NCBI RefSeq assembly: GCF_026571515.1
Contig: NW_026866038.1
Coordinates: forward strand, 62,001 to 126,000
Source of the DNA: Ruditapes philippinarum
Taxonomy: Eukaryota
Length of the DNA stretch: 64,000 bases
Direction of reading: 5' to 3'
A model generated the notes under the pieces. The model was not told the DNA's origin. It saw only the letters and a list, made by a program, of their open reading frames with translations, and did not search any database. Positions 30,236-54,686 of this stretch are shown piece after piece (positions within the stretch are counted from its first letter, which is position 1; the number at the start of each line of letters is the position of its first letter). The position numbers were made by a program, and so were the translations under genes.

Positions 30236-30250
30236 AAATGTAGTATCTCC

Positions 30251-33200
30251 TCACATGTCTTGATTTTCGCATATGTATTGCAGAACATTACTGTTGCAAT
30301 GCCAATCGGCCCATCTCCCCTTACTGTCGTCTTTTCCGTTCAATGTACCACAGTTTTCATTTTGTTTAAAATTATCAGGTTGATGTGCAATCCAGTTTGA
30401 ATATCCAGTTTCTGAAATGGGAGTTTTTGTCTCCATCCATACCCAGACGCCTTCTTCTTGTATATCACTGAGCGCTATCCAGTAGTTTTCTATTGATATG
30501 TTATTTAGCCAATTAAAGTAATCATATACTAAAGACTCGATCGCCGCTGTGCTATACTAAATTACTTAAATTGTCTGATTTACCATTCATTACTCTTTGA
30601 CAATTATTACTGTTCAAAGAAAGTTATAAGCCCTATCTATGTATAAAATTAACTTACCAAAAGATACAAAACAGCTGATTCCTCTTATAAAAAAATAATT
30701 ATACATCTACTTATGTAAAAATGTAATAGCCTCATAAAAACAAATAATCAATAATATTTTCATTCAAAACGATAATTTGTATCATAACACGGTCATCAAA
30801 TTAACCTAATTAGCTATGTTAGTATAATTAATACGATTTGAAATTATGATAACATTCGCTATAAAGAAAGGGACGACAAAAAAGATATAAATTTCACTAA
30901 CCATTAAACCTCATCGCCATAGAAGCAAGAAACGCGTTCTCTGCAGCTGTCTCAATCTCTACTAATTTTCCTCCTAAAATGTGACACATATTCTGAAATG
31001 GAAACGCAGAAAAACATTATATGATAATTCAACATAAATTCATCATAATTAAATATTGGGTGTAATATTACAAAGGGGTTTGTAGCTGTACCAGAACTCT
31101 ATATTAGGGTCAGTTATGACGAAAATTAGGTCCAGACCGAAAAAACATGTGACAACCCTTATATATAGACAAGGGTTCCAACTCCAAATAAACACATTTT
31201 TCGCCATTAGCTTAATGAGAAGCTAATTCCTTCTCCATTTTTCAAGCAAATTATATATTTTTATGTGTACATGTAGCATTCTCATTGTACTTTCAAGAAA
31301 TGATAGCAACTTGTCCCTTTAACCATGCATATAAAAACATGTCGGACACAAACCTAACCGAAAACGACTTTTTTTGCTTAGTCCACCTAGAAGTCGCAAC
31401 ATTATAAACAACGTGGTTTATCCCGTAAAAAAATTTACAATAATGAATACGGGAAGCAAAGGCTTGAATTCAATAAAAAAGACTATTTTGCAAAACATAA
31501 ATTTATGATTACCTGTAATTGTTTCGACAGTCAACCACGCAATCGGTTGTTTTCTTTCACTTGCTATTTTTCTCCGAGAACAGCCATTCGCCTGTCACCA
31601 GCATCTGATGCATTGACCAATCAGAACTCCCGTAGTATAATATTTCTATCCTAAACGTGACAAGCGAATGGCCGTTCTCGAAGAAAAAAGGGCAAGTGAA
31701 AGAAAAAACCGATTACGGTGTTTGGGTCTGGACCTAGTTTGGGGTCACAACTGACCCTTATATAGAGTCCTGGAACCGTTACAACCCCCTTTGTAATATT
31801 ATGAACGAATGCAGACTGCTTCATAAACGATTGTATATATGGAGGCTGCACAGTCGAGCGTATAAAGGTTCGTTCCTGTTTTAAGCGACGTGACATAGGG
31901 CGAGATACGATACGGAATAATGGAAAATAACGTGAGTTCGAGCTAGTTTGTTTAAAATATTTGTTGTATGTTGTATTTTGTTGTGTTCGAAAAAGATAGT
32001 CATGCGCAGCAAAGATATAATGGTGTATAATGATCAAAAAAGAAGAATATATTACCTAGTAAGGAAAACGTTATGAATGCCAGATGCAATTTGACATACT
32101 TTTAAATAGATGTATTGAAACAGATACTTGTTCAGTTATGTCATTAACGTGTTTACTATTAATATTTATAATAAATATTTAGAAACATTGATGAAATAAA
32201 TGCATATTTTCATTTTCGTATTTTCAATGTGAAATTTTAATTTTCACAACAGCGAAACATATTTTCTGTATTTTCAATAGTGTCTTGCGGAAGTACTTTC
32301 TCCTACATTCTACTAATACACACATTTTAATAGGAGGGGTCTTTAAAATTGTAATGTCGAAAAGGAGAAAAAATATGTATAATAAACTGAAAATTCAAGC
32401 CTTTTTTAAAACTAAAGAGGATCATCAAACAACCATTCATACATAGTTTCATCAAAATCAACCCAATAGTTAAGGGGGATAAGTTGTTTAAAGAATTTTC
32501 AGATATAAGTTCTGATAGCCTTATGGTTTAGCAGACGAGAATAATAATTTGAATTATTATTATAGACGATCATCCAAGGACCATTCATTTTTATTTTCAT
32601 CAAAATCTACCCAATAGTTTTCCTGTAATAAAGAAAGACAAAGGAACTTTGAATAATAACTGAAAAAGTCATATAATAAAATAGTTATTGCATAATTACT
32701 TATTTGAATTTCCAAATCTATTGACCTTTCTTATGTGAAATTTACCTCATTATCATATAATAATTATAAAACATACCACAGCACTTGACCAATCCTCCTG
32801 GTCGTGACTAAAGTGATAACATGAATTACCATGATGCATCCATCCGTTTGGACAAGACGCATCTAAAATAAATATATATAATTATGGTCATGTACAACTT
32901 GTCAATTTAGTGTATGTCCCTGAAACATCTAAAATAACAATGAAGTAATATTTGTTTCATTGGGAACCATACTATTTACGTTAACCATTCTCCTTTTTAC
33001 TTATTTGATAGCTTTATTTCATTTTATAAAGTAATTACTGTAATTTACATTACATTTTTGAGTGTTTTTAAAATATTTGGAGGGGCCAAATATTTGTCTT
33101 TTGTTGTAGATCACCATCTTCTCTTACGTTCTCCTCGAACAAGAAACTAAAGAATTCTATGGGGTTTTTTAAAAAAAGAAAGAAAAAAACATTGATATAT

Positions 33201-33306
33201 ACTGCGTTTCTTTGATATTTGATAACTTGAATGTAAAACACAAAAGAGACTTACCCGAATACCAGAATAAAGGACATATAACCAATAAGGTAATAACGTT
33301 CCACAT
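30251..33306 (-). CDS. Perlucin-like secreted C-type lectin, copy 2 (4 coding exons, 155 aa)
   Basis: Exons complement(33255..33306, 32777..32862, 30902..30992, 30251..30489), GT-AG, 468 nt in frame. [68 protein letters not shown]...WIALSD...QPDN...ENC...WADWHC...YICE. Confidence 0.93.
31071..31793. mobile_element. MITE / non-autonomous DNA transposon in lectin-2 intron 2
   Basis: Imperfect ~75-bp TIRs (CAAAGGGG...CTCTATAT(T/A)AGGGTCAGTT...TAGGTCCAGACC) flanked by the 8-bp direct repeat TAATATTA (31063..31070 and 31794..31801). No ORF. Confidence 0.85.
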
Positions 33307-34144
33307 ATCTGAGGCGGTAATTATTGTAAAATACACATTATCTACTTTGTTCTTATCAATTGTACTATTTTGTCAGTGTCCCAGTTGTCAAAACCACGAT
33401 AACACGTAACTACATGTATTTTATGACAAACCTCGTAAAAGGGACACATCATTCTTATACTGTGTAAGTTTTAAACATGACACGCATACTTTTTTAACCT
33501 TTTGGTTTCTTCTGGCAAGGTTTGTTTGACGTTAATGAAAAACATCATACTTGCTTATGAGAATTTATGTTACCACTCATTTTAGTTCACAGTAGATTTA
33601 TGTTCATTTAGTATAAGTTCTTTCATCTTTAAAGCATATCAACTTCTAACTTATAAAGGCCCATTATGATGCTTCATAAATGTTTTTATTTTTATTTCTC
33701 AAAAGTTTTTTAAAATTTATTTTGGATGTACGTTTCTTTCCAAAATGCTATTCAATGGCCAATTACTTGGTCAGTTATTTCATTTTCTTCTGTTGCTTTT
33801 GTCAATCAGTACAGTTAGAGTGATTAAGTACGTAAGTCAAAATAGTGAAACTACATCTTTGTTAACATTTTACTATTGTTATGTCAAATAATTTCACGTT
33901 AAGCGCTTTATTAAGCAATCCGTGCAGGTCAGTTTTCACATTTGTGCTGTCCGATCGTGCATGTGCTGTTTTATTAAGTTATCGCTGTAAATGATGAATG
34001 GCTTTGTCTAGACTGAAAGATAATAATGGTAATGATAAAAGCTAATTTATATAAGAAATATTACCAATGGCATTGGTGACATTTAATATAAGTGAATGAG
34101 TGAAATAAAGACTAAGCATTTGTTTCTCGGTATTGTAACTGAAG

Positions 34145-34270
34145 ACAAGTAACATGTTATATATCATTCACTCACCCATTCTCTCACTCATTTATCCACT
34201 CACTACGTCAATCAATCGATCTATCGATCGATCAATCATTCAATCAATCAACAAATCAATCAATTAATTG
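34145..34270. repeat. Compound tetranucleotide microsatellite (CACT/CATT/CAAT/CGAT)
   Basis: Direct inspection. Confidence 0.7.
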
Positions 34271-34427
34271 CTCTATCACACACACTTGTGCATGCGCACG
34301 CGGTCGCCTACGGCCTTCGTGGTCAATTCCTACGCATCAAAACTCCAAACCGGTGTTAAATAGCCGATATACATTTCTCAGGCCGATGTTAGTTCTTAAT
34401 TATATTTTTCTTCAAGTGTTTTCCGCG

Positions 34428-34490
34428 TATAAATATTTAACAACGTTAGCTTCATTTTAACTTTGACTTTCAACAGCAAGGAAGGAAAAG
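34428..34490 (+). promoter_or_regulatory. TATA box, Inr-like TCATT and non-coding exon 1 of gene A
   Basis: TATAAAT at 34428, TCATTT at 34452, donor AAG|GTGAGT at 34490/34491. Conserved with 45834..45896. Confidence 0.75.
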
Positions 34491-34834
34491 GTGAGTATGT
34501 TATATTATTACTTAATGTGTAGATTATATACAAGATATTTGTTAGTTTTTTTTTTTAAAGTTACCTTAAAAAAGAAGAAAAAAGAACTAAAAAACTGAAA
34601 ATGTTTTATTTAGTTTTTAGCGCTGGTGAATTTAGAATTCGTATAAGATATGGTTCACATTCTTTATAAACAAGCACATTTGTATTTTGTGGAAATATAA
34701 TTGTTATTAATGAAAATCATTAATCTCTGAATGATATTTTATTATTGAAAAGATATTATTTTTGTTTATCGCTAGATTATGCCAATCACACTGTTTTCCA
34801 AAACTTTATTTTATCTTGTTGGTTTCCAGCGAAA

Positions 34835-36061
34835 ATGATGACGTCATCAAATGTGCACGTTGTATTGCTTGCCACGGCAACGCTTGTAAGTTTTGCTTGT
34901 GCTGTAGAGAATTCCACCCAAAAGCAGATAGGTGTTTTAAAAAACACATATTTCAACCATGTGTCCATTTTCTACACTGAAGTTTGAAAAATATCTTTTA
35001 CTTAACCATTTGTTGCTGTTAACTTTTCAATTATTTGTTGTTTTTGATCTTTAAAATATTTGTTCGATGTAAGTGTTATGTGAAAACTAAACAATATTTT
35101 TACAATAAATATAACGAACAACCAAGTAGGGATTCTTTATCTATTTACTGACTCAAACGTCTAAGGCCGCTCAAGGAAAATTATGTTACGGTTATGAGGT
35201 CCAATCCTTTATTGCAAGGTCTATAAACTCAGTTCAAAATCTTGCCATCGAGGTTAATATGTTTTGCCCAACAAATGTAACTCCACAAAAGTTGGAAGCA
35301 AAGTTTACGACGTTCGTATGTATCACATCACATATGTTCTAGAACATGGATTGTTGATAACGTTATCTTAAATTCGATAAAAACCAACATTAGCCGTTCT
35401 AAAATAACACCCAACGCAACACATAAGTCTCAAAAGGCGTAGTTAATGTTGCTGATATGCTGAAGGAATTGAAAAAGTTTACATTTGTTTCTTGTCTTTC
35501 TTGAAGGGATTTAGCGATAGCCTCACGAAAACACAAGACAGACTCGAAAAGTTTAATCCTTTTGACCGTTTCAAAAAATGGCCTTTCCGTAACTTTCGCA
35601 ATGAGGATGGAGGCGGAGGTGATTTTCATTACCACAAAGTTAAAGGAGATGGGACGGTTCGTAACTATCGCGTGGAGGACGGAGGTCTAGGGGACAGATA
35701 CTATCACGAGGTCGACGCAGATGGGAACGTTCGTAACTACCATGTCGAAGACGGAGGTCAGGGTGACCGAATGTACCACGAATTCGAGGCAGATGGGAAC
35801 GTTAGAAACTACAATGTCGAAGACGGAGGTCAGGGTGACATGACTTTTCATGAAGTCGACGAATATGGTAACGTTCGTAACTACTATGTTGAAGACGGAG
35901 GTGAAGGTGACAGATGCTACCACGAAGTCGAAGGTGACGGGAGTCCATTTCGTGGTAATTATTATTACAACTATGTACATGGAGGTAGACACCGTTTCTT
36001 TCACAGCGAGAGCAGCTCCTCCGAGTCTATGGATTGGGATGATTTTCTTTTCGACTTGTAA
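34835..36061 (+). CDS. Secreted acidic 24-aa-repeat protein A (5 repeats), unrecognised family
   Basis: Exon 2 from ATG 34835 encodes a hydrophobic leader. Exon 3 (35507..36061, acceptor TTTCTTGAAG) encodes GFSDSLTKTQ..., 5 x (VRNYxVEDGGxGDxxYHEVDxDGN) and ...SESSSSESMDWDDFLFDL*. The donor equivalent to gene B's is AT rather than GT at 34928; an in-frame GTAAGT at 34886 is the alternative. Confidence 0.8.
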
Positions 36062-36519
36062 GCAATTTGTTCACTGTGGGGTATTTTGGCGTCGTTGTGG
36101 CCTTTTTTATTCTGATATTTGCACGGTTGCATTTCTGTTAACTAGTCGGATCTTTTATTACATTTGTTTTTACATTTACATATCCTGATATCGGGTATCG
36201 AAATTAAACTCATCGCCATAAATTCACTGGCAAAAGTATTAAAAAACCCTACCATTTGAGAAATATATTCAACAATATTCATCAAGAAATTCGATTTAAT
36301 TTCGCATTACCATAAAATGTATAGTCTTAAATCATAACATAATGACAATATTTATTTTTTTATCAGGTTCCCTTTCATAAATAGAATGCTTGATTCTTAT
36401 TGAACATAATGAATTAGTAACATATTCATGTATATATAACTTGACCTAGTTAAAAAGCATTGCACTGAGTTACAATCTGTATTATGTCATTAACATCGCG
36501 GTTTCACAATATGCTGTAA

Positions 36520-37075
36520 TGTTTGACCATCACACGATTGAATCACAGTCTGTCACCTTTCAGGATCACACCATAGTATTTTCGCATCATTGTGATTTCA
36601 TCTTCGCACGGTCGCACATAGTGTTTCGCTATAGCACGATCGCACCTAAGTATTTCACCATTGCATGGTGCCATCATTGTTTTTCACCATCGCATGTTGC
36701 CATCATAGTATTTCACCATCGCATGAAGGCTCACAGTGTTTTACCATCGCATGGACGCACCTTAGTATTTCACTATCGCATGACCGCATCATAGTGTTTC
36801 ACTATTGCACGACCTTATAGTGTTTCATTATCGCACAACCGCATGATAGTGTTTCACTATCTCACGACCGCATCATAATGTTTCATGATCACATCAAATT
36901 GTTTCCCCATCGTACGATGGCGTTTCGCTAACATGCAATCGTGTTTTGACCATCGCTTTCATTATCTTGTACTCCTACTATTGTGTTTCCATTATCGCAG
37001 CATTTTGAATCGTGAGTTAGGTAAATTTAAGCAAAATAAAAAGCCACGATTTATATCGTAACAGAACTCCATACT
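36520..37075. repeat. ~29-bp minisatellite, unit 2 copy
   Basis: Same motif as 11770..12240. Confidence 0.85.
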
Positions 37076-38105
37076 AGCTTCGCCCCATCCTATTCTGAAT
37101 ACATATTTGTATAGAGAAGTTTTTGTAAATTGTACGAGTAAGCTTTCGATAAACATTATGCTAATCCTACTTTCAGATTTGATTCATTGTTCTGAAATCG
37201 AGCATACTGGAGAAACGAAAGCGGCAGAAAAACTATTCAGTCTACTTGTAGAAACTGTTATTCTGATTAAAAAATTAAAGACACTTCATTATGAATTTTT
37301 TCCCTTTTTTGTTATTCTATTGGTTTATACGATCGGAGGAGTAAACAACTGGTCAATATCGCCACACTTAAATTATTTGAAAATATGAGCTGTCGTCCCT
37401 TTGTCATCAACCAAGCACCGACTTAGCAATATTTGAATTTCACTATATAATTAAGTATTAGAAAAAGATATAACAAAATCTAAAATGCGTCCGTACCAAA
37501 CATGACATATAGTCTAAATCGTGCTAAATTGAGACATGTATATAGTTACATGTACATTCATTTTCTTTTAGAAATATTTACTTCAGAAATAACTTATTAT
37601 CTTTCATTAAGAAAAAAATCTGCAAACACAGTTATCCCTCGGAAACTTTAATCACAACAAAATTACATGAAAATTGCAGACTCGAGCGGTACTCAATTCT
37701 CAACACTTAATAGTGATAGCAGCAATGATCCCGAAGGAAGAAGTCGCAATGTCATCTCTTGTTCGATCGTTAGATAAATCTTTATAAGAATATATAGTCA
37801 TCAGACAACTTTGATGGTGCTCATAGGTCTCTTGTTCAGTTGTCATTAAATACATTCATAAGACAAAATTACTATGGAATGAAATAATTTGAAATAGGGC
37901 ATTGCACTAGCAATGAAAATTCATATGCAAAACAAATCTTTTTAAACAAACACAAAATTACCATGCAGGCGTTATCATTTAAAACATGTCTATAAACATA
38001 ATAAGAAAAGGGCACGTTAGCTTAACTGTTTACCACGCTAAATATCTTAAACCGATTTTTCAGTTCATTATTTTATGTGTATGTATTTGAGTTTATCTGT
38101 GATCC

Positions 38106-40290: not shown

Positions 40291-40296
40291 TTTATT
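40291..40296 (-). terminator. Candidate polyadenylation signal of lectin 3
   Basis: AATAAA followed about 20 nt later by GT-rich TTGTCTTTGTCC on the minus strand. Conserved at 27732..27737 downstream of lectin 2. Confidence 0.45.
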
Positions 40297-40799
40297 TCAG
40301 TTGCTTTGACACAAAGTCATACAAATGATAAAAGGGTTAACCCACAAATACTCCATCACTGAAAGGAAAAAGTATATCACAATAGAGGTTTGTGGTGGAC
40401 TTTCTTTAGGGATTCTTATTTTTATCTATTTATAAATATGACTTTTACCTAACATTTTGACGTTCGTCAGGTTTTCCCCCGAATTTTGTTAAATATAGGT
40501 GAGTTATGAACAATTTTGGCCGTTTCATTTGTAGTTGAGTAAGACAATTGTATTAACAGTTTAATGGTCATAATTCTTATGGTAAATTATTTTTGTGGCA
40601 ATGAAAATATTAAAAATTTAAGTAGGCAGGCACCGTCACATTCCATATCATATTTTTGATTTAGTACGCCGAAAGACAATTTTTTTCTTTTATCTAATAT
40701 CATCAATCATTTGATAAACTTGAGCCTCGTGAAGTGGCAAACGTGTCGGTTTTACACGTATTAATTGAACTTTGAATATGAAACAAATGTAGTATCGCC

Positions 40800-42881
40800 T
40801 CACGTGTCTTGTTTTTCGCATATGTATTGCAGAGTATCACTGCTACAATGCCAATCATTCCAGTGTCCATCATAGTTTATTCCAATCAATGTACCACAGT
40901 TTTCATTATTTTTCACATTATCAGGCGCACCTGGCATCCAGTTTGAATATCCAGTTTGTGACATTGGAGTATTGGTCTCCATCCATACCCAGACCCCTTC
41001 TTCTTGTATATCACTAAGAGCTATCCAGTAATTTTCTATGGATATGTAATTTAGCCAATTGAAGTAATTATACAATACAGACTCGATTGCCACTATGCTA
41101 TACTTAATGGCTATTATTGACTTATTTTGTAATTGAATAAATTCCATTCGCAGTTATTAGATATCTTACCCTTTGACAATTATTAGTGTTCAAACTTATC
41201 TAAAGCAGCTGAACACCCTGATAAAAGCCATTATACATGTACTAATATGAAAAATGAAATATCCTATTCAATACAAATAATCATTCTTTTCTTTCAAAAA
41301 TATAATTTGTGTGACAACACGGCCATCATATTAACATAATGAGCTATGTCAGTATGATTAATTATGTACGTCTTTGTTGAAAAAATGATAAAAAATATGA
41401 CCGAATATATATTCATTTCTTTTACCATTAAAGTTTATCGCCATAGACGCAAGGAAAGCGTTCTCTGCAGCTGTCTCGATTTCTACTAATGTTCCTCCTA
41501 AAATGTGACACATATTCTGAAATGGAAACGTAGACTTTACTAAATAAACGCGATATTAAAGCTTGATACATGTCTAATATTTGTTGGCCCCATCCCATAG
41601 CAATCCTTTTTTTCAGATTGTTTTTGCCGACATGATCACTACAAACGTCACAATTAATATATATTGACTGTTCGAGACAAAAAATTACAATCATTTACCA
41701 AAAGTTACCCAACATCTTATAAATATTTTATTACACTTTTTGTCGGAGATGCTCTTGACCTAATTTTCAGTAAAGTGAAACCACCTTCCATACCCAAATG
41801 AGTGATAAGTGATAACATACCATAGCGCTTGACCAGTCCTCCAGGTCGTGACTAAAATGATAACATGCATTATTGTGACGCATCCATCCGCTTGGACAAG
41901 ACGCATCTAAATGAATTAATACAATTACATGTCTGTTGTTGTTATTATATTTATCTTATGTACGATTTTGCATATTTAATTAAGTATGCCCTTAAAAGTG
42001 TTTTTAATTAATACTTAAGTAATATTTGTTTTCTTGCGAACCATTGTTAATGTTCGCTACTTGAGTATATTATTCCGTATTAGGTTAGGTGAGATTTTGT
42101 GATGGCAGTGTGTCTGTCGTCTGTAATTTGTCGTAATCCATAATAACTTAAAAGGACAGCTCCTCCTTAACCACTTGGTAGATTTATCTCTAACTTCACA
42201 GGAATAGTTTTTAGATGGTCATCTAAAAATAAATGGTTCAAGTCTGAATTTAAATATAGACTTCAAGATGAAATAATTGAAAATATTCTCCTCAAAAACT
42301 ACAATTCCCGGAACGTATATACATGACATGTAGCATCAATTTGTGGTCATGTAAATCATGAGGTTCACCCCGGCAAGAATTATTCCCAACCCGTTGTAGT
42401 CTAGACAATGTGTTTTTAAATTTTTTAAAGTTCTCCAGTTCTAGTAGTTCCTAGCGAACATCTACACACGTTTTAAAAATCATGCAGCTTGGGTAAAGAT
42501 GACAACCAAATGTGACATATTTACTGCCGTTTGCATTGGATAATTGTAACCTTTTGTAACTATGTATCTCAGATGAGCGATTATTGCCCTCTTGTTTGCT
42601 TACTTGATAAGTTTACCCTTTTTAAATAAAGTATCTTTTTAAATAAAGTAATATCTTTAATTTAGAAAATTAGATTAATATGGGAGGGAATGGTCATTTG
42701 TTTTGTCTTTAAATAGGTAACCAATCCCTTACGTTCTAAACGAGCAAAATATGCTTTGTTATTCTAAACAAAGTTTCATTGTTTCCGTACCTTGTTTTTT
42801 ATGCAAAGAAAAAAATCAAACAGACTTACCTAAACTCCAGAATAAAGAACATATAACCAATAAGATTTGAACTTTCCACAT
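40800..42881 (-). CDS. Perlucin-like secreted C-type lectin, copy 3 (4 coding exons, 154 aa)
   Basis: Exons complement(42830..42881, 41821..41906, 41426..41516, 40800..41035), GT-AG, 465 nt in frame. MWKVQILLVICSLFWSLDASCPSGWMRHNNACYHFSHDLEDWSSAMNMCHILGGTLVEIETAAENAFL...WIALSD...APDN...ENC...WNDWHC...YICEK. Confidence 0.93.
42060..42596 (-). mobile_element. Decayed pearl/Helentron-like element in lectin-3 intron 1
   Basis: Ends CAGATGAGCGA...GCCCTCTTGTT, the reverse complement of the 28876 terminus. Microsatellite-like GTCTGTCGTCTG near the other end. Confidence 0.55.
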
Positions 42882-43476
42882 CGTGCATATATCTGAAGCG
42901 GCAATTATTTATTATGAAAATTGTCCGGTTAGTTCTTATCTATCAATTTTGTCCTACATGTGCATGTACATGACCAAGATAACGCTAGCGTTATAAAGTC
43001 ACAATTCAGCAAAAAAAGTCATTCCATTTTTGATAAAAAGTACTGTATAGTTATTCTTTTGATCTTCTGGCGTCCTCTCACTTTTTGGATATATTTAGAA
43101 AAACAGATATGTAAATTGTTTACATGAATTAAAATATTCACATTCATTCCAAGCAACAGTCTGTTGTTCGTATACGTAAATATTTGAAGTAACTTCACTC
43201 GTCTTTAAAGACATTAAGATGCATGCAGGCGCTTGGTGCAATGTATATGCGGAGAGCACATTCATCGTACAACCTTCACTGCATACGCACTTAACCTCAA
43301 GCCAGCATCTGAATCTACCAGTCATATCAGTGCAGACCAAGATTATCCGCCACCTCCATGCCATCTGATCATGTCTGCAATGTTTACTATTCAGTCAGTA
43401 CTTAATATTTATACTTTTCGCTAAAAAAGTGATGAATGGTTTTGTCCAGACACACACACTCACTAAATTAATCACT

Positions 43477-43614
43477 NNNNNNNNNNNNNNNNNNNNNNNN
43501 NNNNNNNNNNNNNNNNNNNNNNNNNNNNNNNNNNNNNNNNNNNNNNNNNNNNNNNNNNNNNNNNNNNNNNNNNNNNNNNNNNNNNNNNNNNNNNNNNNNN
43601 NNNNNNNNNNNNNN
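43477..43614. other. Assembly gap flanked by (CA)n
   Basis: Run of N. Confidence 0.99.
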
Positions 43615-43669
43615 CACACACACAAGCCGCGAATGCGCACACCCACATACTCATTTATCTCTCAATGGC

Positions 43670-44870
43670 GACTTAGTCACCACTTTTGGCGTATAGTGGA
43701 TATTGTGTATGTGCGTCCGTCCATACGGATTTGTTGTGTCTATATCTTGCTCATTCTTCAAAGGATTACAAAATAATTTGGTACAAATATTCATCATAAT
43801 AGGTGCTGTGTTGAATAAAAAACACAGGTTCGTCGCTCAAAGGTCAAAGTCACAGTTGGGGTTAAGGGCAAAACCCCTGTCCGAAAGGTAACTTCTGCAT
43901 GCATGGAGGGATTTTAATATAGCCCGGTACAAATATCTCCATAGTGAGGCAGAGTGTCGCATAAAGAATTCAGGTGTCTGTGTCAAAGATTAGGGTCACA
44001 CTTAGGGGTAAAAAGTCAAATAACAAAATCAAACATTCATTTGCGAGTGTAACTTCTTTATACATGGATGGATTTAGATATAACTTTACACAAATGCTCG
44101 CGCAAAACCCGTGTTATAAGCATAACATCTACTTGCGTGGTGGGACTGAAATATATAATTATAACTAGGGTCAAATGTTCTCTACAGTAAAGCAAAGTGT
44201 CACTCGAAAAATCTAGGTGTCTGTGGCAAAGGTCAAGGTCTTACTTCAAGGATAAAGGTCATCAAGTTTAAGATTTACTTGTGAGTATCACTTCTAGATA
44301 CATGAAATGACTTTAATATAACTTAGAAAAAATGTTATCCATGGTGAGTTAAGTGGTCTTGCGGAAAATTAAGGTCAAGGTAACAAGAGGTCAAAGGTCA
44401 AATAAAACGAACAAAATTTGTTTGTCGGCACTGTATCTTGCTTATACTTTGAAGTATACAGCTAAGGTGTCAGAGGATTTTTGTCGAGCCCGCTTGCGAT
44501 GTGACATTATTGTCAAAATGGCTATTTAGTATTTGTGTGTGCGTGGGTGCGTCCAAACTTGTCCATGCCATAACTGATACGTGCATGGAGGAATTTTTAA
44601 ATAACATGAATTGAGTTTTCTAGACACAAATGTTCATCATGAGACTTCGTGTCATGCACATGAACTAGGTCGCCGGGTCAGTGGTCAAGGTCATCTTAGA
44701 TAATGCAATGTCAAGATTTTGCCTTGGGAATAAAGAGGAAGTGTTTCGCACATCTAACCTATGTATACATCTCTTTTCTTGAAGCTTATATGTTCAGGTT
44801 CAATTAAGTCGAACGGACTCGAGATTCAGCCTGTGGGCATGTGACATGTCTTGCACTTTACAATCGACCC
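43670..44870. mobile_element. Decayed Helentron/MITE-like repeats with AAGGTCAAGGTCA cores
   Basis: Recurring AAGGTCAAGGTC-like motifs and GTGCGTCCGTCC microsatellite heads near 43710 and 44535. Not present in unit 2. Confidence 0.55.
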
Positions 44871-45833
44871 TTTGACGTATTCCTGAAATCAAGTATATTT
44901 AACTACAGATGAACATATCCAATTTATTATTTAAGTGTTTTTAGTAATAAGGAAGATATAAAAGTGCAGTAACAGTACTGACATTTTGATCTGTTAAGAT
45001 TGCACTTTAAATAAAGTGTTCTTGGTAACTGGGCAAACGTAACCTTTTTTAGCTCATCGGAGCTCTTCGAAAAGTAATTGCGTCCATCAATCACAAGGAG
45101 CATGTTGTATGTGAGATATTTACATCGAGACCATGTTTTCAGCGCAATGATAACTATATTGTCCAATTTTCCTGATAGCTGTTTTGACAAAAAATAAAAT
45201 ATGTATGTCGCCTACGACAATCATTAAGAAAACCAAGTCAAATCATCCGACTCAAAGTAAGAACATAATTCCACAGAATGCGCACCATATTACTTTTAAT
45301 ATCCAATTTCATGACGTCGATTATAACTGACGTCTGTATATGATAATTGCTTTGTGTATAAAACAATTTTCAAATTATTATAGAAGTAACAAAACTTGAC
45401 CCTTTGTATAAATCAGTTAATATACTTTCCCCGTAGTAGGGTACTGCAAGTTAAGAATAATCAGTTCTAAGGAACACTTGGTTGAACTGTTCAGTTTAAA
45501 AACAATAGTATGCAAGAGACAGTCACAAACTAGATCAAACAACAGCAATAAGAACCTAAAGGTAATAGCTTTCTATTTATCTCCAAGATTAATTCGATAT
45601 TTGGTTTAAAAATGATTAAAAACGAAATAAAATAAATAAAAATAATTGTTATAAAAGCAAATACAAACAAAATTATAAAAAACGAAAAGAAAAACATCAC
45701 CTGGTTAGGGTCTTAGGTCTTAGTCTTAGGGTGAGCGTCCCCGTGTCATTATTCACTTCTTGTTGTTTGTTTTGTTTTGGTTTCATTCCAAGAAGAAATA
45801 TTGCATCATACTTTTCTTCAAGTGTTTTCCCTG

Positions 45834-45896
45834 TATAAATAGTTTACAACGTTAGCTTCATTTTAACTTTGCTTTTCAACAGCAAGGAAGGAAAAG
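45834..45896 (+). promoter_or_regulatory. TATA box, Inr-like motif and non-coding exon 1 of gene B
   Basis: TATAAAT at 45834, TCATTT at 45858, donor AAG|GTGAGT at 45896/45897. Confidence 0.75.
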
Positions 45897-46244
45897 GTGA
45901 GTATTTAATATTTTTAATGATTGTGTAGATTATATACGAGATATTTGTTAGTTTTGTAAAAGTTACCTTAAAAAGAAGAAAAAAGAAATTGAAAAAAATG
46001 AAAATGTTTAATATAGTTTTCTAGCGCTAGTGAATCTAGAAATCATAAGCGATATACATGTATTTCACATTCGTGATCTACAAGCACACTTTCATTTTTA
46101 GAAAATAATTGTTATTTAATGTAAATCATAAATCTCTGAATGATATTTTATTATTGATTAAGTTATTATTTTTACATTATCACTAGATTATGTATATATC
46201 CCAATTTTCCATTAATCTTATCCTGTTGATTTCCAGCGAGAAAG

Positions 46245-47564
46245 ATGGCGTCATCAAATGTGCTTGTTATGTTGCTTGCCATGGCAACGCTTGTGAATTT
46301 TACTTGTGCTGTAGAGAATTCAACCCAAAAACAGGTAGGTGTTTTAAAAAATGTTTCAACCATGAGTTCTTTTTCTTCACTGAAGTTTGGAGAATATCTT
46401 TTACTTTTACCATTTGTTGCTTTTAATTTCAAATATTTGTTATTTTTTATGTTTAAAATATTTGTTTGATGTTGGTGTAATTTGAAAACTAAATAATATT
46501 TTTGCAATAAATACGAACAACTAACAGACAAGTAACACTTCTGTATCTATCTACTGACATAACTATATCTTTTAACGGCTTAAGCCGATCATGAAAAATT
46601 ATGTAACGCGTACGAGTGTTCCAACCCATCTTTGCAAGGTCTTTAATCTCAGTTCAAGTTCTGGCCACCGAAGTACATATGTTTGCCCAACAAATGTCTC
46701 TTTTCAAAAGTTAGAAGCAAAATTTTCAAACTTCGTATGTATAACATTACATATGTTCTAGAAAACTGATTGTAATAACGTTTACATGAATTCGGTAAAA
46801 ACCAACATCAGCCGATCTAAAATAACACCCAATACCATACAAAGGTCTCAAAAAGCGTCAATGGTGTTGCTGGTGTTACAACGGTTAATGTTGAAGAAAT
46901 TGCTAAAGTTTAGATTTGTTTCTTATCTTTCTTAAAGGGAATCACCGACAGTCTCACGAAAACACAAGACAGACTCGAAAAGTTTAATCCTTTTGACCGT
47001 TTCAAAAAATGGCCTTTCCGTAACTTTCACAATGAGGATGGAGGCGGAGGTGATTTTCATTACCACAAAGTTAAAGGAGATGGGACGGTTCGTAACTATC
47101 GCGTTGAGGACGGAGGTCTTGGGGACAGATTCTACCACGAAGTAGATGGAGATGGGAACATTCGAAACTATGGTGTTGAGGACGGAGGTGAAGGTGACAT
47201 ATATTACCACGAAATCGATGAAGATGGGACTGTTCGTAACTACCATGTCGAAGACGGAGGTCAGGGTGACAGAGTGTACCAAGAAGTCGACGCAGATGGG
47301 AACGTTAGAAACTACAAGGTCGAAGACGGAGGCCAGGGTGACATGACATTTCATGAAGTCGACGAATATGGGAACGTTCGTAACTACCATGTTGAAGACG
47401 GAGGTGAAGGTGACAGGTACTACCACGAAGTCGAAGGTGACGGGAGTCCATTTCGTAGAAATTATTATTACAACAATGTACATGGAGGTAGAAACCGTTT
47501 CTATGACAGTGAAAGCAGCTCCTCCGAGTCTATGGATTGGGATGATTTTCTATTCGACTTGTAA
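46245..47564 (+). CDS. Secreted acidic 24-aa-repeat protein B (6 repeats, 238 aa), unrecognised family
   Basis: join(46245..46334, 46938..47564), phase-0 GT-AG intron. MASSNVLVMLLAMATLVNFTCAVENSTQKQ|GITDSLTKTQDRLEKFNPFDRFKKWP, then 6 repeats, then PFRRNYYYNNVHGGRNRFYDSESSSSESMDWDDFLFDL*. Confidence 0.9.
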
Positions 47565-48009
47565 GCAAATTATTTACTGAGGGGTTACCTTTATCGCGTC
47601 GTTGTGATCTTTTTGATTTTGATATGTGTACAAGTTGCATTTCTGTAGAATAGTCAGATCTTATATAACATTTGTTTTTATATTTGCATATCCTGACATC
47701 TGATTAAGGAATTAAAACTGTCGCCAAAAGTATAAAAAAAATCTTACAATTTGAGCAATATATTCCACAATATTCATCAAGAAATTCGATTTGGTTATTT
47801 TGCACTACCATCAGTAGAATAGCCTTAAATATTAAAATAACAACTATAATAATTTATTAACGGGTTCATTTCCATGTATAGAATGCCAATTTTCTTATTG
47901 AACTTAATTTATAAGTGGCATATGCACGTATATGACTTGAATTGTTTAAAACCTTTTGCATTGTTTGACAATCTGTATTATGTCATCAACATCGCGATTC
48001 CACAATTAT

Positions 48010-48350
48010 GCTGTCATGTTTCAGCATTACAGGATTGAACCAAAGTGTTTCACTTTCGCAGGGTGCCATCATAGTATTTCACCATCGAATGTTGCCATCA
48101 TAGTGTTTCACTATCACACGATCGCATCATAGTATTTCACGATCGCATCAAATCACGATTGCATCATAGCGTTCCACTATCGCAGGATCGCATCATAGTA
48201 TATCACTATCATGCAATCGTGTTTTAATCCTTGTTCCGAAGTGTTTTCATCATCGTGTTATCCTGCTATTGTGTTTCCATCATCGCAGCATTTTGAATCG
48301 TGTGTTATGCAAATTAAAAAAGCAACGATTGTCGTAACAGAACACTGTAC
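48010..48350. repeat. ~29-bp minisatellite, unit 3 copy
   Basis: Same motif as 11770..12240. Confidence 0.85.
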
Positions 48351-49334
48351 TCGCTACGCTCCATCCTTTTCTTATAAGTGTATAACGATAACATTATTTG
48401 TGGTAAATTGTAAGCTTTTGATAACCATTATGCTTTTCTTACTTTCAGATTTGATTCATTATTCTAAAATCGAGCATTTCGGAGTGAAGAAAGCCAGGAA
48501 GATTATTCAGTTTGCTTGTAGAAACTTTTATTCTGATTAAAAAGTTAAATACACTCTTATAATTCTTTTATTGTTATTCAAGTAGTTTATACCATCAGAG
48601 TTATGATCGGAGCAGTAAACAAATGGTTAATGTCGCCACACTTCAATCATTCGAAAGTATACTCTTTCCTCTGCCTCAACCAAGCACCGATTTGGCACTA
48701 TTTGAAATTCTTTATAATTAAGGATTTTGAACATTGATGACAATACTGACAATCTAAAATGCATTTTTACCAAACAAGACATAAATCGTGCTAAATTAAG
48801 ACATATAGTTACATTCATTTTTTTAATATTATCTTTAGATAAAACTTATTATCTTTCATTAAAAAGTCGCAATGTCATCTCTTGTTCGATCATTAGATAT
48901 ATAAATAAGACAGAGTGGCATTTATAGGCTTCCATACTTTATCCTTTATAATAATAGATTGACAATTATATAATTTATTTGGATTTCAAGTCGTTCGGAG
49001 TTCTACTACACCCCAAGTGTCTATAGTCCTGACCAGACAGAAGACTACAAAGTGGTATACATTAGTTTCAATCTTTTACCATAATCGAGATGAAATATAC
49101 AGTTTTAAAGCAAAAACATGAATAATTTCTGACTACATGACAAGCTTTTATCCATGATGGTTATTTCCTTTGAGCATCGCTCTGAGTTGTAGTGGGATGA
49201 GGGAAAGAAAAGTGTACATCCTTAAATAGCGTTAGCTTAACTCTTACCACGCTTAATTTTCAATACATTCTTTTTATGTGTATGTATTTGAGTATATCTA
49301 TGATCCCCACCGATTGTCCAGATATGCGAGTCCT

Positions 49335-51277: not shown

Positions 51278-52190
51278 GGTATAATAGTTTGGATGAACTT
51301 TAACAATACATCGTTCAGAGTTATCCGTCGCATGGTATAACAGTTTGAATGTACTTTAACAATACATCATTAAGAGTTGTCCGTCGCAACGTATAAAAGT
51401 TTGAATGTACTTTAACAATACATCGTTTGGAGTTATCTGTCGCAAGGTATAAAAATTTGAATGTACTTTAAAAAAACATCGTTTGAAGTTATATGTCGCA
51501 AGGTATAAAAGTTTGAATATACTTTAACAATACATCGTTTGGAGTTATCTGTCGCACGGTATAAAAGTTTGATTGTACTTTAACAATACTACGTTTGAAG
51601 TTATCTGTCGCACGGTATAAAAGTTTGAATGTACTTTAACAATACATCGTTTGGAGTTATCTTTCGCACAGTATAATAGTTTGAATGTACTTTTACAATA
51701 CATCGTTTGGAGTAATCTGTCGCACGGTATAATAGTTTGAATGTACTTTTACAATACATCGTTTGGAGTAATCTGTCGCACGGTATAAAAGTTTGAATGT
51801 ACTTTAACAATACATCGTTTGGAGTTATCTGTCGCACGGTATAAAAGTTTGAATGTACTTTAACAATACATCGTTTGGAGTTATCTTTCGCACGGTATAA
51901 AAGTTTGGATGTACTTTAACAATACATCGTTTGGAGTTATCTGTCGCAAGGAATAAAAGTTTGAATGTACTTTAACAATACATCGTTCAGAGTTATCTGT
52001 CGCAAGGAATAAAAGTTTGGATGTACTTTAACAATACATCGTTCAGAGTTGTCTGTCGCAAGGTATAAAAGTTTGGATGTTCTTTTACACCTGTCACACG
52101 GTGTAAACGTTTGGATGTTCTTTTACAATATATGGTTAAGAGTTATCTGTCACACTGTATAAAAGTTTGGATGTACTTAAACTATACATT
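51278..52190. repeat. 56-bp minisatellite (~16 copies)
   Basis: Unit GTATAAAAGTTTGAATGTACTTTAACAATACATCGTTTGGAGTTATCTGTCGCACG. Confidence 0.95.
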
Positions 52191-53384
52191 GTTCATCGTC
52201 AAATGAAGCTTTTAAAATCAGCTCCTTTAAATAACGTTACGCTTTAGGATCTGACATCCACCCATAGGTAGTCACCTTCTCGTTGCCAATCATTGGCGTG
52301 CTCTCTCTATTTTGAAGGCGATCCGGTTTCCAATTTAACCATTGGAAAACCAATAATGAGAAGGTAAGTTTCACACATTTATCACTAGCAACCTTTATCA
52401 CTATACAACCTCTCGTTGTACTTCTTAATCATCATTTGAATTCAAGCTGTATTTTAAAGGCATTTTAAACATGTATGTATACATGTTTACATAGTTATCA
52501 GTTCCTTGCTTGCGAAAGTGCCGTGCTTCGAAGGTTAAACTACCGCTACCACCACCACTAACACAAAATCGTATTTTACCTTCGAGTCGACGGATTTTCT
52601 GCAAAAGATGGTCCGAGTGGGTGCATTCAGCAGGTGCGCGACGACGTAGTAGTCTACCATTGTAACACCACCAAGCATTATTTCGGTCAAGAGCAGGCGC
52701 CTGAAAAGAATCACTGATCCAGCTACATGGATTGAGCTCTTCCATACATGTAATAATCCAAAGACCGTAGCGGGATTGGAATCAACGTGTGCAACGACCG
52801 TTACCACTCTTCCGGAGAGATTCTCAATATAAAACTATACAATACAACGTCAATACACATTGATGAGCAAAACAAGGTGTGGAATATGGTAAAATAATTA
52901 ACCATTGTATGTAATTCATCAGCCGAAAATGATCGTATTTTCATTAGAAATCTTAAAAGAATTTAGTAGGCTACAAACTAGTTGAATACAACACTATTCA
53001 TAAAAGAAAGAAGTAGATCAAGTAAAAAACAACAACAAAAAAAACACAAAAAAAACACACAAACAACAGAAGAGTAGTAAAAGTTTAAAATCACAGACAC
53101 AGTTTTTTTAAGTTTGTACACGATGGTTCATTGAAAGAAGTCGACTAGAGACAGAAACGGCCTGCCATAAATTACAGTATGCATATTTTCATTATGCATT
53201 GGTCTTTGAAATTGAAAACGATTTCCGTCTTTATGGTAAAAATTTAACTGAAGTGGGTTCATTAATTTTAATGTTGTTAACAACTTTTGTTGATTCCTTC
53301 TTTTTACGTAAACGAGGAAAATTCCAAAAAGCCACTTCATTTATTTTTAAGAGGTTCCGTGAAGACTTCCGCGAGAACATGCAG

Positions 53385-53450
53385 TATATAAAAACTGACC
53401 GGTTAATTGTTTATCATATACTTATATTGTAAAAAGCACAAAATTGCAGG
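53385..53450 (+). promoter_or_regulatory. TATA box and probable non-coding exon 1 of gene C
   Basis: TATATAAAAA at 53385, TCA at 53414, donor CAGG|GTGCGT at 53450/53451, acceptor TCTAG ending at 53560. Confidence 0.6.
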
Positions 53451-53569
53451 GTGCGTGCTGATTATTATATGCATTCTATAATTTGATTTATAGGAAAAGC
53501 CATAAACTTCCAGATTTTCATTTTATTTCATATTTTTATATATTCTTTGCTGGTGTCTAGGTTGCAAAA

Positions 53570-54686
53570 ATGAAGTTAACAACTTTGATTGCAGTCGGCG
53601 TTCTTGTGGCAATGTTTGCAAGCGTCTCTTGGGCAGATTCCTCGTCCTCGGAAGAGGTAAGCATAATTATGTCTTATCAATCTTTTTATTCTATATAAAC
53701 AAGTATAGGATTTTTGAATTAGAAAAAAAAACTAGAAAAGAAACAAATAATTTGTTTGTTTGATTGGTGTTTACGCAAATTTTATATGGTCATATCTCGG
53801 AAAGCGATTCACTTAAAGGGTTTTCCCGGATAATTGACCAGTAATTAACAATTGCTTCTTATGTGACCGGCTACTTATCCCACATGGTTTTTGAATCAGC
53901 TGTGAGAGACAAGTGTCTGTGGAAAACATTCGTCTCTATCGAGGACCCCTTGATTAAAAGAAAGTTTTATGTTGTCCGTATTGAGCTTAGAGAGATAAAA
54001 AGAACAAATAAACACGCACAAAACATAACATAACAACGTTTAATACAAGTTCGTGATCTTAACTGTGGTCGCCAACAACAAGTCACTAAACGTTAAAATT
54101 TCACCAGGAATGCTTGAGTTTGACATCTGAGGAATATATACACCAAATATCGATGATTTTTCACAGGATATTTATGGTAAAACTTGAAAAAAGAAGGAAT
54201 TATAATTTATACATAAACAATAAACTTGTTGCGTTTACCTCAACAAATAACGAAATAAATGATGGATCTAATAGATCTAATATAATACATTTAAGTATAT
54301 ACCGTGGATACTCATAGGCAAGAATGGTTACGCATTATTTTTCTTAAGAAAAAACTACATGCTAAAACCAATAATGCAATAAGATTAAACTCAATACATG
54401 TTGTAGTTCATTTTTTATATCATTATTAAACATCTTGATTTCATTTTTAAAACAGAGGGATCGCTATTACGAAGGCTATGGGCGAGGTTATCCCTCAGAG
54501 AACATCCAACAGGGTGGCCGTTACTTTGGCGACAGAGACCTTGACCGTCGCCACCACTTCCATCGTAATCCTTTTCGAGAGGACCGTCACTACTACAATG
54601 TGCACGGAGGGAGACCTAGATACGTGAATAGGGACAGCAGCGATTCAGCATCTATTGACTGGGATGAGTTTCTCATAGCTTTGTAA
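53570..54686 (+). CDS. Small secreted R/Y/G/H-rich protein C, candidate phosphoprotein (105 aa), repeat-less paralogue of A/B
   Basis: join(53570..53656, 54456..54686), phase-0 GTAAGC...AACAG intron. MKLTTLIAVGVLVAMFASVSWADSSSSEE|RDRYYEGYGRGYPSENIQQGGRYFGDRDLDRRHHFHRNPFREDRHYYNVHGGRPRYVNRDSSDSASIDWDEFLIAL*. The last 38 aa align without gaps to the A/B tail. Confidence 0.88.

What the first reader, a model, noticed from the sequence alone, without database searches (positions are those of the whole stretch)
30251..54686. Co-duplicated head-to-head module: perlucin-like lectin plus novel secreted acidic repeat protein (candidate biomineralisation cluster)
Seen in sequence: lectin 2 (-) and gene A (+) start about 1.1 kb apart and face away from each other. 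Lectin 3 and gene B repeat that arrangement, unit 1 keeps the lectin and the partner's 3' UTR, and paralogue C follows. Established: perlucin is a mollusc shell C-type lectin that modulates CaCO3 precipitation, and shell matrices are rich in secreted acidic low-complexity repeat proteins. Inference: the divergent pair may be co-regulated and co-secreted as a two-component matrix system. Mucus, adhesive or immune secretion is the alternative.
Basis: partly seen in the sequence, partly recalled or inferred. Interest (0 to 1): 0.85.

Follow-up and report, generated by a model that had tools for sequence, protein, structure and literature searches.

The report
Clam lectin plus orphan acidic-repeat gene duplication
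In the Manila clam genome, a tandem duplication at the end of a C-type lectin gene array carried a species-restricted gene for a secreted acidic repeat protein along with it; both genes are real and expressed, but nothing yet shows that they work together or build shell.

Summary
The window is Ruditapes philippinarum contig C14525. It holds three tandem units, each with a perlucin-like C-type lectin gene on the minus strand.

- Units 2 and 3 each carry a divergently oriented partner gene, gene A and gene B.
- Unit 1 keeps only the partner's last coding exon and 3' region.
- Gene C, a shorter paralogue without repeats, follows.

Genes B and C and all three lectins are already RefSeq models. B is LOC132731081 and C is LOC132731087, both 'uncharacterized'. 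Gene A has a G>A change at the +1 position of its intron-1 donor and has no protein model.

RNA contigs confirm that gene B and lectin 3 are spliced as modelled, in one library at similar depth. Two deep RNA runs show neither gene. One run shows gene B only.

The partner family has no detectable relative outside this locus. At least five more lectins upstream, and three on another contig, have no partner. The conserved promoter blocks are separate, and the N gap is intergenic.

The pairing is best read as inheritance from one segmental duplication. A shell-matrix role is plausible from composition: signal peptide, pI about 4.6, 24-residue beta-hairpin repeats and a serine cluster. It is untested, because the tissue of expression could not be read.

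Earlier scan notes concern this same window only.

The parts
522..10958 (-). Lectin 1, a perlucin-like C-type lectin (P0017, XP_060573174.1). Exon 1 is at 10958-10907, exon 2 about 8880-8794, exon 3 about 8365-8279 and exon 4 about 754-522. Exon 5 was not found in the window. The 7.5-kb intron between exons 3 and 4 holds a BEL/Pao retrotransposon.
   Evidence: tblastn and splice-site reading; Lectin_C on exon 4; Peptidase_A17 at E 2.4e-50
11450..12829 (+). Unit 1 relic of the partner gene. It keeps part of intron 2, an intact 5-codon exon 3 with its acceptor (12348-12366) and the 3' region. The promoter, exon 1 and exon 2 are deleted.
   Evidence: Self-alignment; exon 3 scan; genome-wide DNA search finds three copies of the 3' region but only two of the promoter plus exon 1
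27781..33306 (-). Lectin 2 (P0018, XP_060573175/6, isoforms X1 and X2). Exon 1 is at 33306-33255, exon 2 about 32862-32777, exon 3 at 30992-30902 and exon 4 about 30489-30255. Exon 5 is alternative, at 28515-28494 or 27802-27781. The sugar-site motifs read QPD and WAD.
34399..34834 (+). Conserved proximal promoter block of gene A, 82% identical to 45805-46244 upstream of gene B.
34835..37195 (+). Gene A. Exon 1 starts at 34835, and the position homologous to gene B's donor reads AT instead of GT at 34928-34929. Exon 2 is at 35507-36057 and holds five 24-aa repeats and the tail. Exon 3 is at 37177-37195. No protein model exists, so it is probably a young pseudogene or a poorly spliced copy.
   Evidence: Sequence reading; absent from the protein databases; dN/dS 0.22 against gene B; exon 3
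40337..42881 (-). Lectin 3 (P0009, XP_060573179.1). Exons are at 42881-42830, 41906-41821, 41516-41426, 41035-40804 and 40358-40337. The sugar-site motifs read APD and WND.
   Evidence: An RNA contig in run X1 joins exon 1 to exon 2, and its loose end reads into exon 3, at depth 33
43477..43614 (.). Assembly gap of 138 N in the lectin 3 / gene B intergenic spacer. It is outside all exons and conserved promoter blocks. It was not filled.
43670..44843 (.). Dispersed repeat inserted in the unit 3 spacer. It accounts for most of the extra intergenic length and for stray RNA reads and joints there.
   Evidence: 1120 first-look candidates genome-wide, 72-82% identity among the long matches; partly fitting reads in X2, X20 and X22
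46245..48467 (+). Gene B, LOC132731081 (P0001, 243 aa). Exon 1 at 46245-46334 encodes the signal peptide. Exon 2 at 46938-47560 encodes six 24-aa repeats, a Gly/Tyr/His/Arg stretch, a serine cluster and an acidic-aromatic end. Exon 3 is at 48449-48467. The exon 2 donor GT overlaps an in-frame TAA.
   Evidence: The X1 RNA contig spans exons 1, 2 and 3 with a GT..AG joint at depth 26.6, and X2 shows depth 25
47061..47445 (+). A 72-bp coding tandem repeat in gene B (5.3 copies, 75% matches). The counterpart in gene A is at 35647-35931 (4.0 copies).
   Evidence: repeat units listed
53570..56931 (+). Gene C, LOC132731087 (P0019, 110 aa). Exon 1 at 53570-53656 encodes the signal peptide and then a run of four serines and two glutamates. 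Exon 2 is at 54456-54682 and exon 3 at 56913-56931. It shares only the C-terminal module with genes A and B, has no 24-aa repeats, and has no lectin facing it.

Best explanation
The region is the distal end of a tandem array of perlucin-like C-type lectin genes in Ruditapes philippinarum. A lineage-restricted family of small secreted-protein genes (A, B, C) sits there.

An ancestral head-to-head pair of one lectin and one partner was copied by tandem segmental duplication, in units of about 11 kb, most likely through unequal crossing-over. The result is:
- unit 3, intact (lectin 3 and gene B);
- unit 2, with lectin 2 intact and gene A carrying a mutated intron-1 donor;
- unit 1, with lectin 1 intact and the partner reduced to its last exon and 3' region.

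The repeated divergent layout is therefore inherited, not independent evidence of functional coupling.

The partner protein is real. It has a signal peptide and an N-x-T sequon. Five or six 24-residue units follow, and they are predicted to form an up-and-down beta-hairpin sheet. Acidic Gly-rich turns (a D-G-G-x-G-D type and a D-x-D-G-N type) line its two edges. Next come a Gly/Tyr/His/Arg stretch, a serine cluster with S-x-E sites, and a short acidic-aromatic helix.

Inferred, not shown: the protein is secreted, phosphorylated on the serine cluster by a Golgi casein-kinase-type enzyme, and binds Ca2+ or a calcium mineral or polycationic surface through the periodic acidic turns. I give a Ca2+- or mineral-binding activity about 40%, and an actual role in shell formation about 30-35%. 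A required partnership with the neighbouring lectin I put at about 10-15%.
For: - Three-unit duplication.
- Exon models agree with RefSeq proteins.
- RNA contigs confirm both splice patterns in one library at depths 26.6 and 33.
- Lectins 2 and 3 are sister copies (support 88/98).
- The partner promoter plus exon 1 exists in two copies, and the partner 3' region in three, all inside the window.
- Other lectins have no partner.
- Purifying selection on the partner's exon 2 (dN 0.040, dS 0.185, ratio 0.22).
- Composition: pI 4.55-4.79, 21-23% Asp plus Glu, 15% Gly, 8% Tyr.
- A single-sequence AlphaFold2 model gives regular strands of 10 and 7 residues per repeat, at pLDDT about 75 over the repeats.
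- The C-terminal module is conserved across A, B and C.
- Orphan status.
Against: - The tissue of expression is unknown, so a shell role is only compositional inference.
- No shell-proteome evidence was found.
- The structural model comes from a single sequence (mean pLDDT 56.5), and its matches are only generic beta-meander sheets.
- Co-occurrence of lectin 3 and gene B in X1, and joint absence from X20 and X22, leave some co-regulation possible.
- dS differs between the partner (0.185) and lectin exon 4 (0.38). A single co-duplication therefore needs rate heterogeneity or gene conversion to explain it. The lectin estimate rests on only 77 codons.
Confidence: 0.65

Rival explanations
1. Lectin and partner form a co-regulated, co-secreted two-component shell-matrix system. 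The acidic repeat protein binds mineral, and the perlucin-like lectin nucleates or organises CaCO3 or binds the partner's glycan.
For: - The two were duplicated together.
- Both are spliced and present at similar depth in RNA run X1, and both are absent from X20 and X22.
- The partner is acidic, repetitive, has a signal peptide, carries a serine cluster and is lineage-restricted, as many shell matrix proteins are.
- The partner has a conserved N-x-T sequon that a lectin could bind.
- Lectins 2 and 3 sit on longer branches than the unpaired copies.
Against: - The conserved promoter blocks are separate, with unrelated sequence between them.
- Run X2 has gene B at depth 25 but no lectin 3 contig.
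- The partner was lost from unit 1 and is probably disabled in unit 2, while the lectins stayed intact. Gene C has no lectin facing it, and eight or more related lectins have no partner.
- 'Perlucin-like' is an automatic name. In published Manila clam work, genes with that name respond to Vibrio challenge in haemocytes, or are listed among differentially expressed genes read as an anti-pathogen response (PMC4234419, PMC8674894).
- There is no shell-proteome or mantle evidence.
Confidence: 0.12
2. An immune or mucosal secretion locus. The lectin array serves recognition of microbes or particles, with diversifying sugar-binding motifs. The partner family is an unrelated secreted component of mucus, haemolymph or a digestive secretion, for example a metal- or Ca-binding or adhesive protein. 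It only happens to lie at the edge of the array.
For: - The sugar-site motif varies among paralogues (EPD, QPN, QPD, APD; WND or WAD) while the scaffold is nearly invariant.
- dN/dS is 0.41-0.47 for lectin 2 against its paralogues.
- The closest solved relatives are mannose-receptor, CD23 and DC-SIGN type domains.
- Published immune induction of perlucin-like genes in this species (PMC4234419).
- The RNA runs that hold gene B with certainty are labelled 'mollusc metagenome'.
Against: - The tissue is unknown.
- The serine cluster, the Gly/Tyr-rich stretch of gene C and the acidic periodic turns fit mineral-associated proteins at least as well.
- No antimicrobial or mucin-like features were found (Pfam gave nothing).
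Confidence: 0.2
3. The partner genes are transcribed, but they are young genes with no function or are decaying, and their repeat structure is a by-product of a 72-bp minisatellite.
For: - Orphan status.
- One copy is deleted and one carries a donor mutation.
- Repeat number differs between A and B.
Against: - dN/dS of 0.22 over 184 codons, with exon identity of 94% against 71-82% in the flanks.
- The C-terminal module is conserved in the much older paralogue C.
- Clean splicing and moderate depth in at least two RNA data sets.
- The repeat model is confident for a single sequence.
Confidence: 0.03

Closest known systems
Perlucin (Haliotis nacre C-type lectin) and the bivalve 'perlucin-like' lectin expansions
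   Same: A single secreted C-type lectin domain of about 140 residues with the conserved cysteine and WIGL-type core. Lectin 2 has the QPD motif. The genes lie in tandem arrays.
   Different: - Lectins 1 and 3 have APD at the sugar site, and lectin 2 has WAD instead of WND.
- The C-terminal tails are 6-7 hydrophobic residues on a separate mini-exon. They are not the two 10-residue repeats of perlucin (that comparison is from my knowledge of perlucin, not tested here).
- Orthology to perlucin, presence in shell and an effect on CaCO3 were not tested.
Lineage-restricted acidic, repetitive shell matrix proteins of molluscs (for example Asp-rich, Gly/Tyr-rich framework proteins such as prismalin-14 or the N16/pearlin type)
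   Same: Signal peptide, small size, acidic pI, tandem repeats, Gly/Tyr-rich stretch, no homologues outside a narrow lineage, rapid change in copy number.
   Different: - No sequence homology.
- Only moderately acidic (pI about 4.6).
- The repeats are predicted to fold into a regular beta-hairpin sheet, not a disordered low-complexity region.
- No proteomic or mantle evidence.
Vertebrate secretory calcium-binding phosphoproteins (SCPP: statherin, histatins, caseins)
   Same: Small clustered genes. The signal-peptide exon ends in phase 0. A serine-glutamate cluster of the S-x-E type lies directly after the signal peptide in gene C and near the C-terminus in genes A and B. Tandem duplication and fast divergence are shared features.
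   Different: No homology and a different phylum. The serine cluster of gene C lies on the signal-peptide exon itself. Phosphorylation and calcium binding are inferred only. This is an analogy, not membership.
Beta-hairpin repeat proteins such as MORN repeats, Rhs/YD shells and the OspA single-layer sheet
   Same: A repeat length of about 23-24 residues giving one hairpin per unit and an extended antiparallel sheet. These are the nearest structural look-alikes.
   Different: No Pfam match to MORN or any repeat family at E up to 1. Foldseek best E is 0.013 and TM is at most 0.26. VIA-align Z of 8-10.7 falls on generic beta-barrels. This shows a common architecture, not kinship.

Membership tests
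C-type lectin domain (Pfam PF00059) | Profile match above the gathering score | tested here: met
   P0009 scores 76.8 bits against a cut-off of 22.6, E 2.6e-21. Exon 4 of all three lectins scores 38-42 bits.
C-type lectin domain (Pfam PF00059) | Canonical Ca2+ and sugar site (EPN or QPD, plus WND) | tested here: inconclusive
   Lectin 2 has QPD with WAD. Lectins 1 and 3 have APD with WND. Upstream paralogues have EPD or QPN with WND. Each window lectin has one ligand position changed.
Perlucin proper | Orthology to Haliotis perlucin, with its C-terminal 10-residue repeats | not tested
The tails here are 6-7 residues. The name comes from RefSeq's automatic naming.
Perlucin proper | Occluded in shell and promotes CaCO3 precipitation | not testable with these tools
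   Needs shell proteomics and in-vitro assays.
Shell matrix protein (operational class) | Secreted: N-terminal signal peptide | tested here: met
   Hydrophobic N-termini of about 22 residues with small residues at -1 and -3 before the predicted cut, in P0001 and P0019. I judged this by reading; no predictor was run.
Shell matrix protein (operational class) | Expressed in the shell-forming mantle epithelium | not testable with these tools
   The gene is expressed in some RNA runs and silent in others. Run and sample labels are coded, so the tissue is unknown.
Shell matrix protein (operational class) | Peptides identified in shell extracts | tested here: inconclusive
   The searchable paper library has no hit for the gene identifiers or six diagnostic peptides. 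The 2011 Manila clam shell proteome paper is not in that library.
Bidirectional-promoter gene pair | Divergent starts less than about 1 kb apart sharing one promoter | tested here: not met
   The ATGs are 1.53 kb apart in unit 2 and 3.36 kb apart in unit 3. Only the gene-proximal 70 bp and 440 bp blocks are conserved. True transcription starts were not mapped.
MORN repeat (PF02493) or other known hairpin repeats | Profile match | tested here: not met
   No repeat family at E up to 1. The only hit was a sub-threshold PknH_C match.
SCPP family | Homology and location in the vertebrate SCPP/SPARCL1 cluster | tested here: not met
   No sequence relative of any kind was found. The resemblance is in layout and composition only.

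The most novel reading that the evidence does not exclude
The A/B/C genes encode a previously undescribed fold class of mollusc mineral-binding protein. It would be a folded beta-hairpin-repeat sheet with strictly periodic acidic turns and a phosphoserine cluster. It arose recently in the Ruditapes lineage and works with its co-duplicated lectin as a matched pair in shell or extrapallial mineral control, for example by the lectin binding its N-glycan.
Probability: 0.08. Interest if true: 0.65.

Novelty: new member of a known kind. Interest (0 to 1): 0.3.

Why it matters
If the partner proteins prove to be mantle-secreted and occluded in shell, they would be an example of a young, folded mineral-binding repeat protein, as opposed to a disordered one. 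Its birth, duplication and decay could all be read within a single 60-kb locus. That would be useful for studying how shell secretomes turn over.

As it stands, the finding mainly documents an ordinary tandem duplication in a lectin array, plus an expressed orphan gene family that RefSeq lists as uncharacterized.

Tried and rejected
- **Complex prediction.** I submitted lectin 3 with gene B. The tool did not fold it, because it treats chain 1 as close to a protein class it does not fold.
- **Encoding contigs.** Sample accessions that might have led to a tissue could not be obtained.
- **Partner-like hits on contig C9297**. These are a 26-bp satellite read in frame and were rejected.
- **Weak phmmer hits P0003-P0005**. 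These are bacterial or unknown low-complexity repeats and were rejected as relatives. P0002 is a truncated 81%-identical fragment from a metagenome contig. It adds no other species that I could name.
- **Fold searches** (Foldseek PDB, VIA-align wide, ESM Atlas). They returned only generic beta-meander or barrel look-alikes.
- **Paper searches.** Searches for gene and protein identifiers and diagnostic peptides gave nothing. Searches for Manila clam shell proteomes and metatranscriptomes gave nothing usable.
- **Joined spliced models.** I did not search any. Exons were searched separately by reference, and whole proteins were taken only from database records returned by the tools.
- **N gap.** It was not filled.

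Full report
**Identity of the window.** A protein search with gene B's main exon returned one hit, at 100% identity: XP_060573173.1, 'uncharacterized protein LOC132731081' of Ruditapes philippinarum. The window is contig C14525:62001-126000 of a 1.41-Gb assembly.

**Check of the observation.** Self-alignment shows three tandem units.
- The lectin exons were located by tblastx and tblastn and by reading splice sites. All lie on the minus strand.
- They reproduce three RefSeq 'perlucin-like' proteins: P0017 is lectin 1 (window 10958 down to 522), P0018 is lectin 2 (33306 down to about 27781) and P0009 is lectin 3 (42881 down to 40337).
- Each lectin gene has five exons: signal peptide, three exons for the lectin domain, and a mini-exon for a 6-7 residue tail.
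- The partner genes are on the plus strand with three exons.
- Gene B runs 46245-46334, 46938-47560 and 48449-48467, and equals P0001.
- Gene A is its paralogue, with ATG at 34835, exon 2 at 35507-36057 and exon 3 at 37177-37195.
- Gene C runs 53570-53656, 54456-54682 and 56913-56931, and equals P0019, LOC132731087.
- Unit 1 keeps only 11450-12829 of the partner. This includes an intact copy of the 5-codon third exon with its acceptor.

Three details need changing. The ATG-to-ATG spacing is 1.53 kb in unit 2 and 3.36 kb in unit 3, not 1.1 kb. The '3' UTR' is largely intron 2. The stated limits cut off the last exons of lectin 2 and gene C.

**The assembly gap.** The 138 N at 43477-43614 lie in the spacer between lectin 3 exon 1 and gene B's conserved promoter block (45805-46244). 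They touch no reading frame. Directly after the gap, 43670-44843 is a dispersed repeat with 1120 first-look candidates in the genome. It explains the longer spacer in unit 3 and the partly fitting RNA reads and odd joints there. I did not test continuity across the gap and did not fill it.

**Transcription.** One run search and one read-laying run were allowed.
- Eighteen listed runs from seven studies hold at least 88% of gene B exon 2's sampled words. Four of them are RNA by record.
- On window 41601-47600, an RNA contig of run X1 joins gene B exon 1 to exon 2 with a GT..AG joint. It continues into exon 3, at depth 26.6.
- Another X1 contig joins lectin 3 exon 1 to exon 2 (CT..AC on the plus strand, which is GT..AG on the minus strand). 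Its loose end reads into exon 3, at depth 33.
- Run X2 has gene B exons 2-3 at depth 25 but no lectin 3 contig.
- Raw RNA reads of X20 and X22 (1.9 and 1.1 Gb read) show essentially no coverage of either gene.

Both genes are therefore real, spliced as RefSeq models them, and not expressed everywhere. Three libraries agree with joint expression and one does not. Sample labels are coded, so the tissue is unknown.

**Extent of the lectin array and of the partner family.**
- Lectin exon 4 has 43 matches in the genome at E up to 1e-10. Five further copies lie upstream on the same contig, all on the minus strand, and three lie on contig C4712.
- Partner exon 2 occurs only in genes A and B. Its other hits are a weak match to gene C and matches to a 26-bp satellite on C9297.
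- The partner promoter plus exon 1 exists twice, and its 3' region three times, all inside the window.
- Gene C is unique in the genome.
- A tree of exon 4 puts lectins 2 and 3 together (support 88/98), on longer branches than the other copies. Lectin 1 is nearest to an upstream copy at 90% identity, and a clade of lectins 1-3 is neither shown nor rejected.

The partner therefore joined the last lectins of a pre-existing array and was copied with them. The repeated head-to-head layout is one inherited arrangement.

**State of the copies.**
- Gene A differs from gene B at the first intron base after exon 1. Where B has the donor GT, A reads AT at 34928-34929. The only in-frame alternative donor nearby is weak.
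- No gene A protein exists in the two protein collections searched, although it would be 91% identical to gene B.
- Gene A's exon 2 is nevertheless open. Against gene B it shows dN 0.040, dS 0.185 and a ratio of 0.22. Exon identity is 94%, against 71-82% in the flanks.
- The family has thus been under purifying selection, and gene A is at most recently disabled. This is inference, because gene A's RNA was not examined.

**Promoters.** Between units, only about 70 bp upstream of the lectin ATGs and about 440 bp upstream of the partner ATGs align. The sequence between them does not. This fits two separate proximal promoters better than one shared bidirectional promoter.

**The partner protein.**
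- Gene B's product has a hydrophobic N-terminus and a conserved N-x-T sequon.
- It then has six 24-residue units (five in gene A) encoded by a 72-bp coding repeat.
- A Gly/Tyr/His/Arg stretch follows, then a run of serines flanked by glutamates, and a short acidic-aromatic end. Gene C shares this end.
- Exon 2 has pI 4.55, 23% Asp plus Glu, 15% Gly, 8% Tyr and no cysteine.
- Pfam gives nothing.
- Exhaustive phmmer against 1.84 billion representatives gives only the protein itself, one 89-aa metagenome fragment at 81% identity, and low-complexity noise.
- The ESM Atlas gives no hit by features.
- A single-sequence AlphaFold2 model has a low overall mean pLDDT of 56.5. Over the repeats it gives pLDDT of about 75, with a strict pattern of a 10-residue and a 7-residue strand per unit. 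This forms an up-and-down antiparallel sheet.
- Structure searches find only generic sheets of that kind: OspA at E 0.013, MORN- and Rhs-type clusters, and beta-barrels at Z 8-10.7.
- In that model the two Gly-rich acidic turns of each unit would line opposite edges of the sheet. That is my reading of the sequence against the strand pattern, not a measured property.

**The lectins.** They are ordinary single-domain C-type lectins. The closest solved relatives are mannose-receptor, CD23 and DC-SIGN domains. Across six paralogues the scaffold is almost invariant, while the sugar-site motif varies: EPD, QPN, QPD, APD, and WND or WAD. That pattern is usual for recognition lectins. In published Manila clam work, 'perlucin-like' genes rise 8- to 39-fold in haemocytes after Vibrio challenge (PMC4234419). 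They are also listed among differentially expressed genes read as a response to pathogens (PMC8674894). Which paralogues those were is not known.

**Interpretation.**
- Well supported: a tandem segmental duplication at the edge of a lectin array carried an expressed, selectively constrained, lineage-restricted secreted-protein gene, followed by loss (unit 1) and probable disabling (gene A) of copies.
- Inferred: secretion, phosphorylation of the serine cluster, and Ca2+ or mineral binding by periodic acidic turns.
- Not supported by any test here: a shell-matrix role, and a functional lectin-partner pair.

**Novelty and score.** All intact genes are already in RefSeq, two of them as 'uncharacterized'. 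No paper in the searchable library mentions them. The locus is a new member of known kinds: a tandem lectin array and an orphan acidic repeat secretory protein. Interest is modest, at 0.3. It would rise if mantle expression or shell occlusion were shown. Earlier scan notes s1-803940 and s1-804045 concern this same window, not other DNA.

Noticed in passing
window 761-8270, with 1028-1392 and 7546-7910: Lectin 1's 7.5-kb intron holds a BEL/Pao-type retrotransposon (Pao peptidase ORF at 4676-5863, E 2.4e-50). It is flanked by two 365-bp segments that are 100% identical. This points to a very recent insertion or an assembly duplication. I observed it only.
   Followed up: partly
window 18644-25019: A second LTR-type element. 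Flanking repeats at 18644-19291 and 24362-25019 are 93% identical. Between them lie ORFs with RT-RNase H and integrase domains. It sits in the 13-kb insert that separates the unit 1 partner relic from the next spacer.
   Followed up: partly
window 14876-16189 (-): A single-exon 438-aa ORF with a B-box zinc finger (E 1e-08) and a coiled-coil-like region. It is a TRIM-like gene or retrocopy inside the same insert.
   Followed up: no
window 47558-47565, 36055-36062, 54680-54687; lectins at 40800-40806 and homologues: In both gene families the penultimate exon's donor GT overlaps an in-frame TAA. Intron retention would therefore end the protein 5-7 residues early instead of disrupting it. The mini-exons encode short hydrophobic tails.
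   Followed up: partly
window 55539-56187, 51278-52089 and 57798-61105: Three repeat arrays. A 54-bp tandem array (12 copies, 95% matches) lies inside gene C's second intron. A 56-bp satellite (14.5 copies) lies between genes B and C. Tandem units of about 1.1 kb lie downstream.
   Followed up: no
protein P0002 (JGI metagenome contig, 1576 bp): An 89-aa fragment, 81% identical to gene B's last repeats, runs straight into sequence matching gene B's intron 2 / 3' region. The C-terminal tail is deleted. It is probably a further decayed copy from another clam haplotype or a related species. Its origin is unknown.
   Followed up: partly
This could be a polymorphism or a short upstream non-coding exon, so the true transcription start is not mapped.
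   Followed up: no
window 27781-27802 and 28494-28515: Lectin 2's terminal mini-exon and its acceptor are duplicated about 700 bp apart. This matches RefSeq's two isoforms, X1 and X2.
   Followed up: partly
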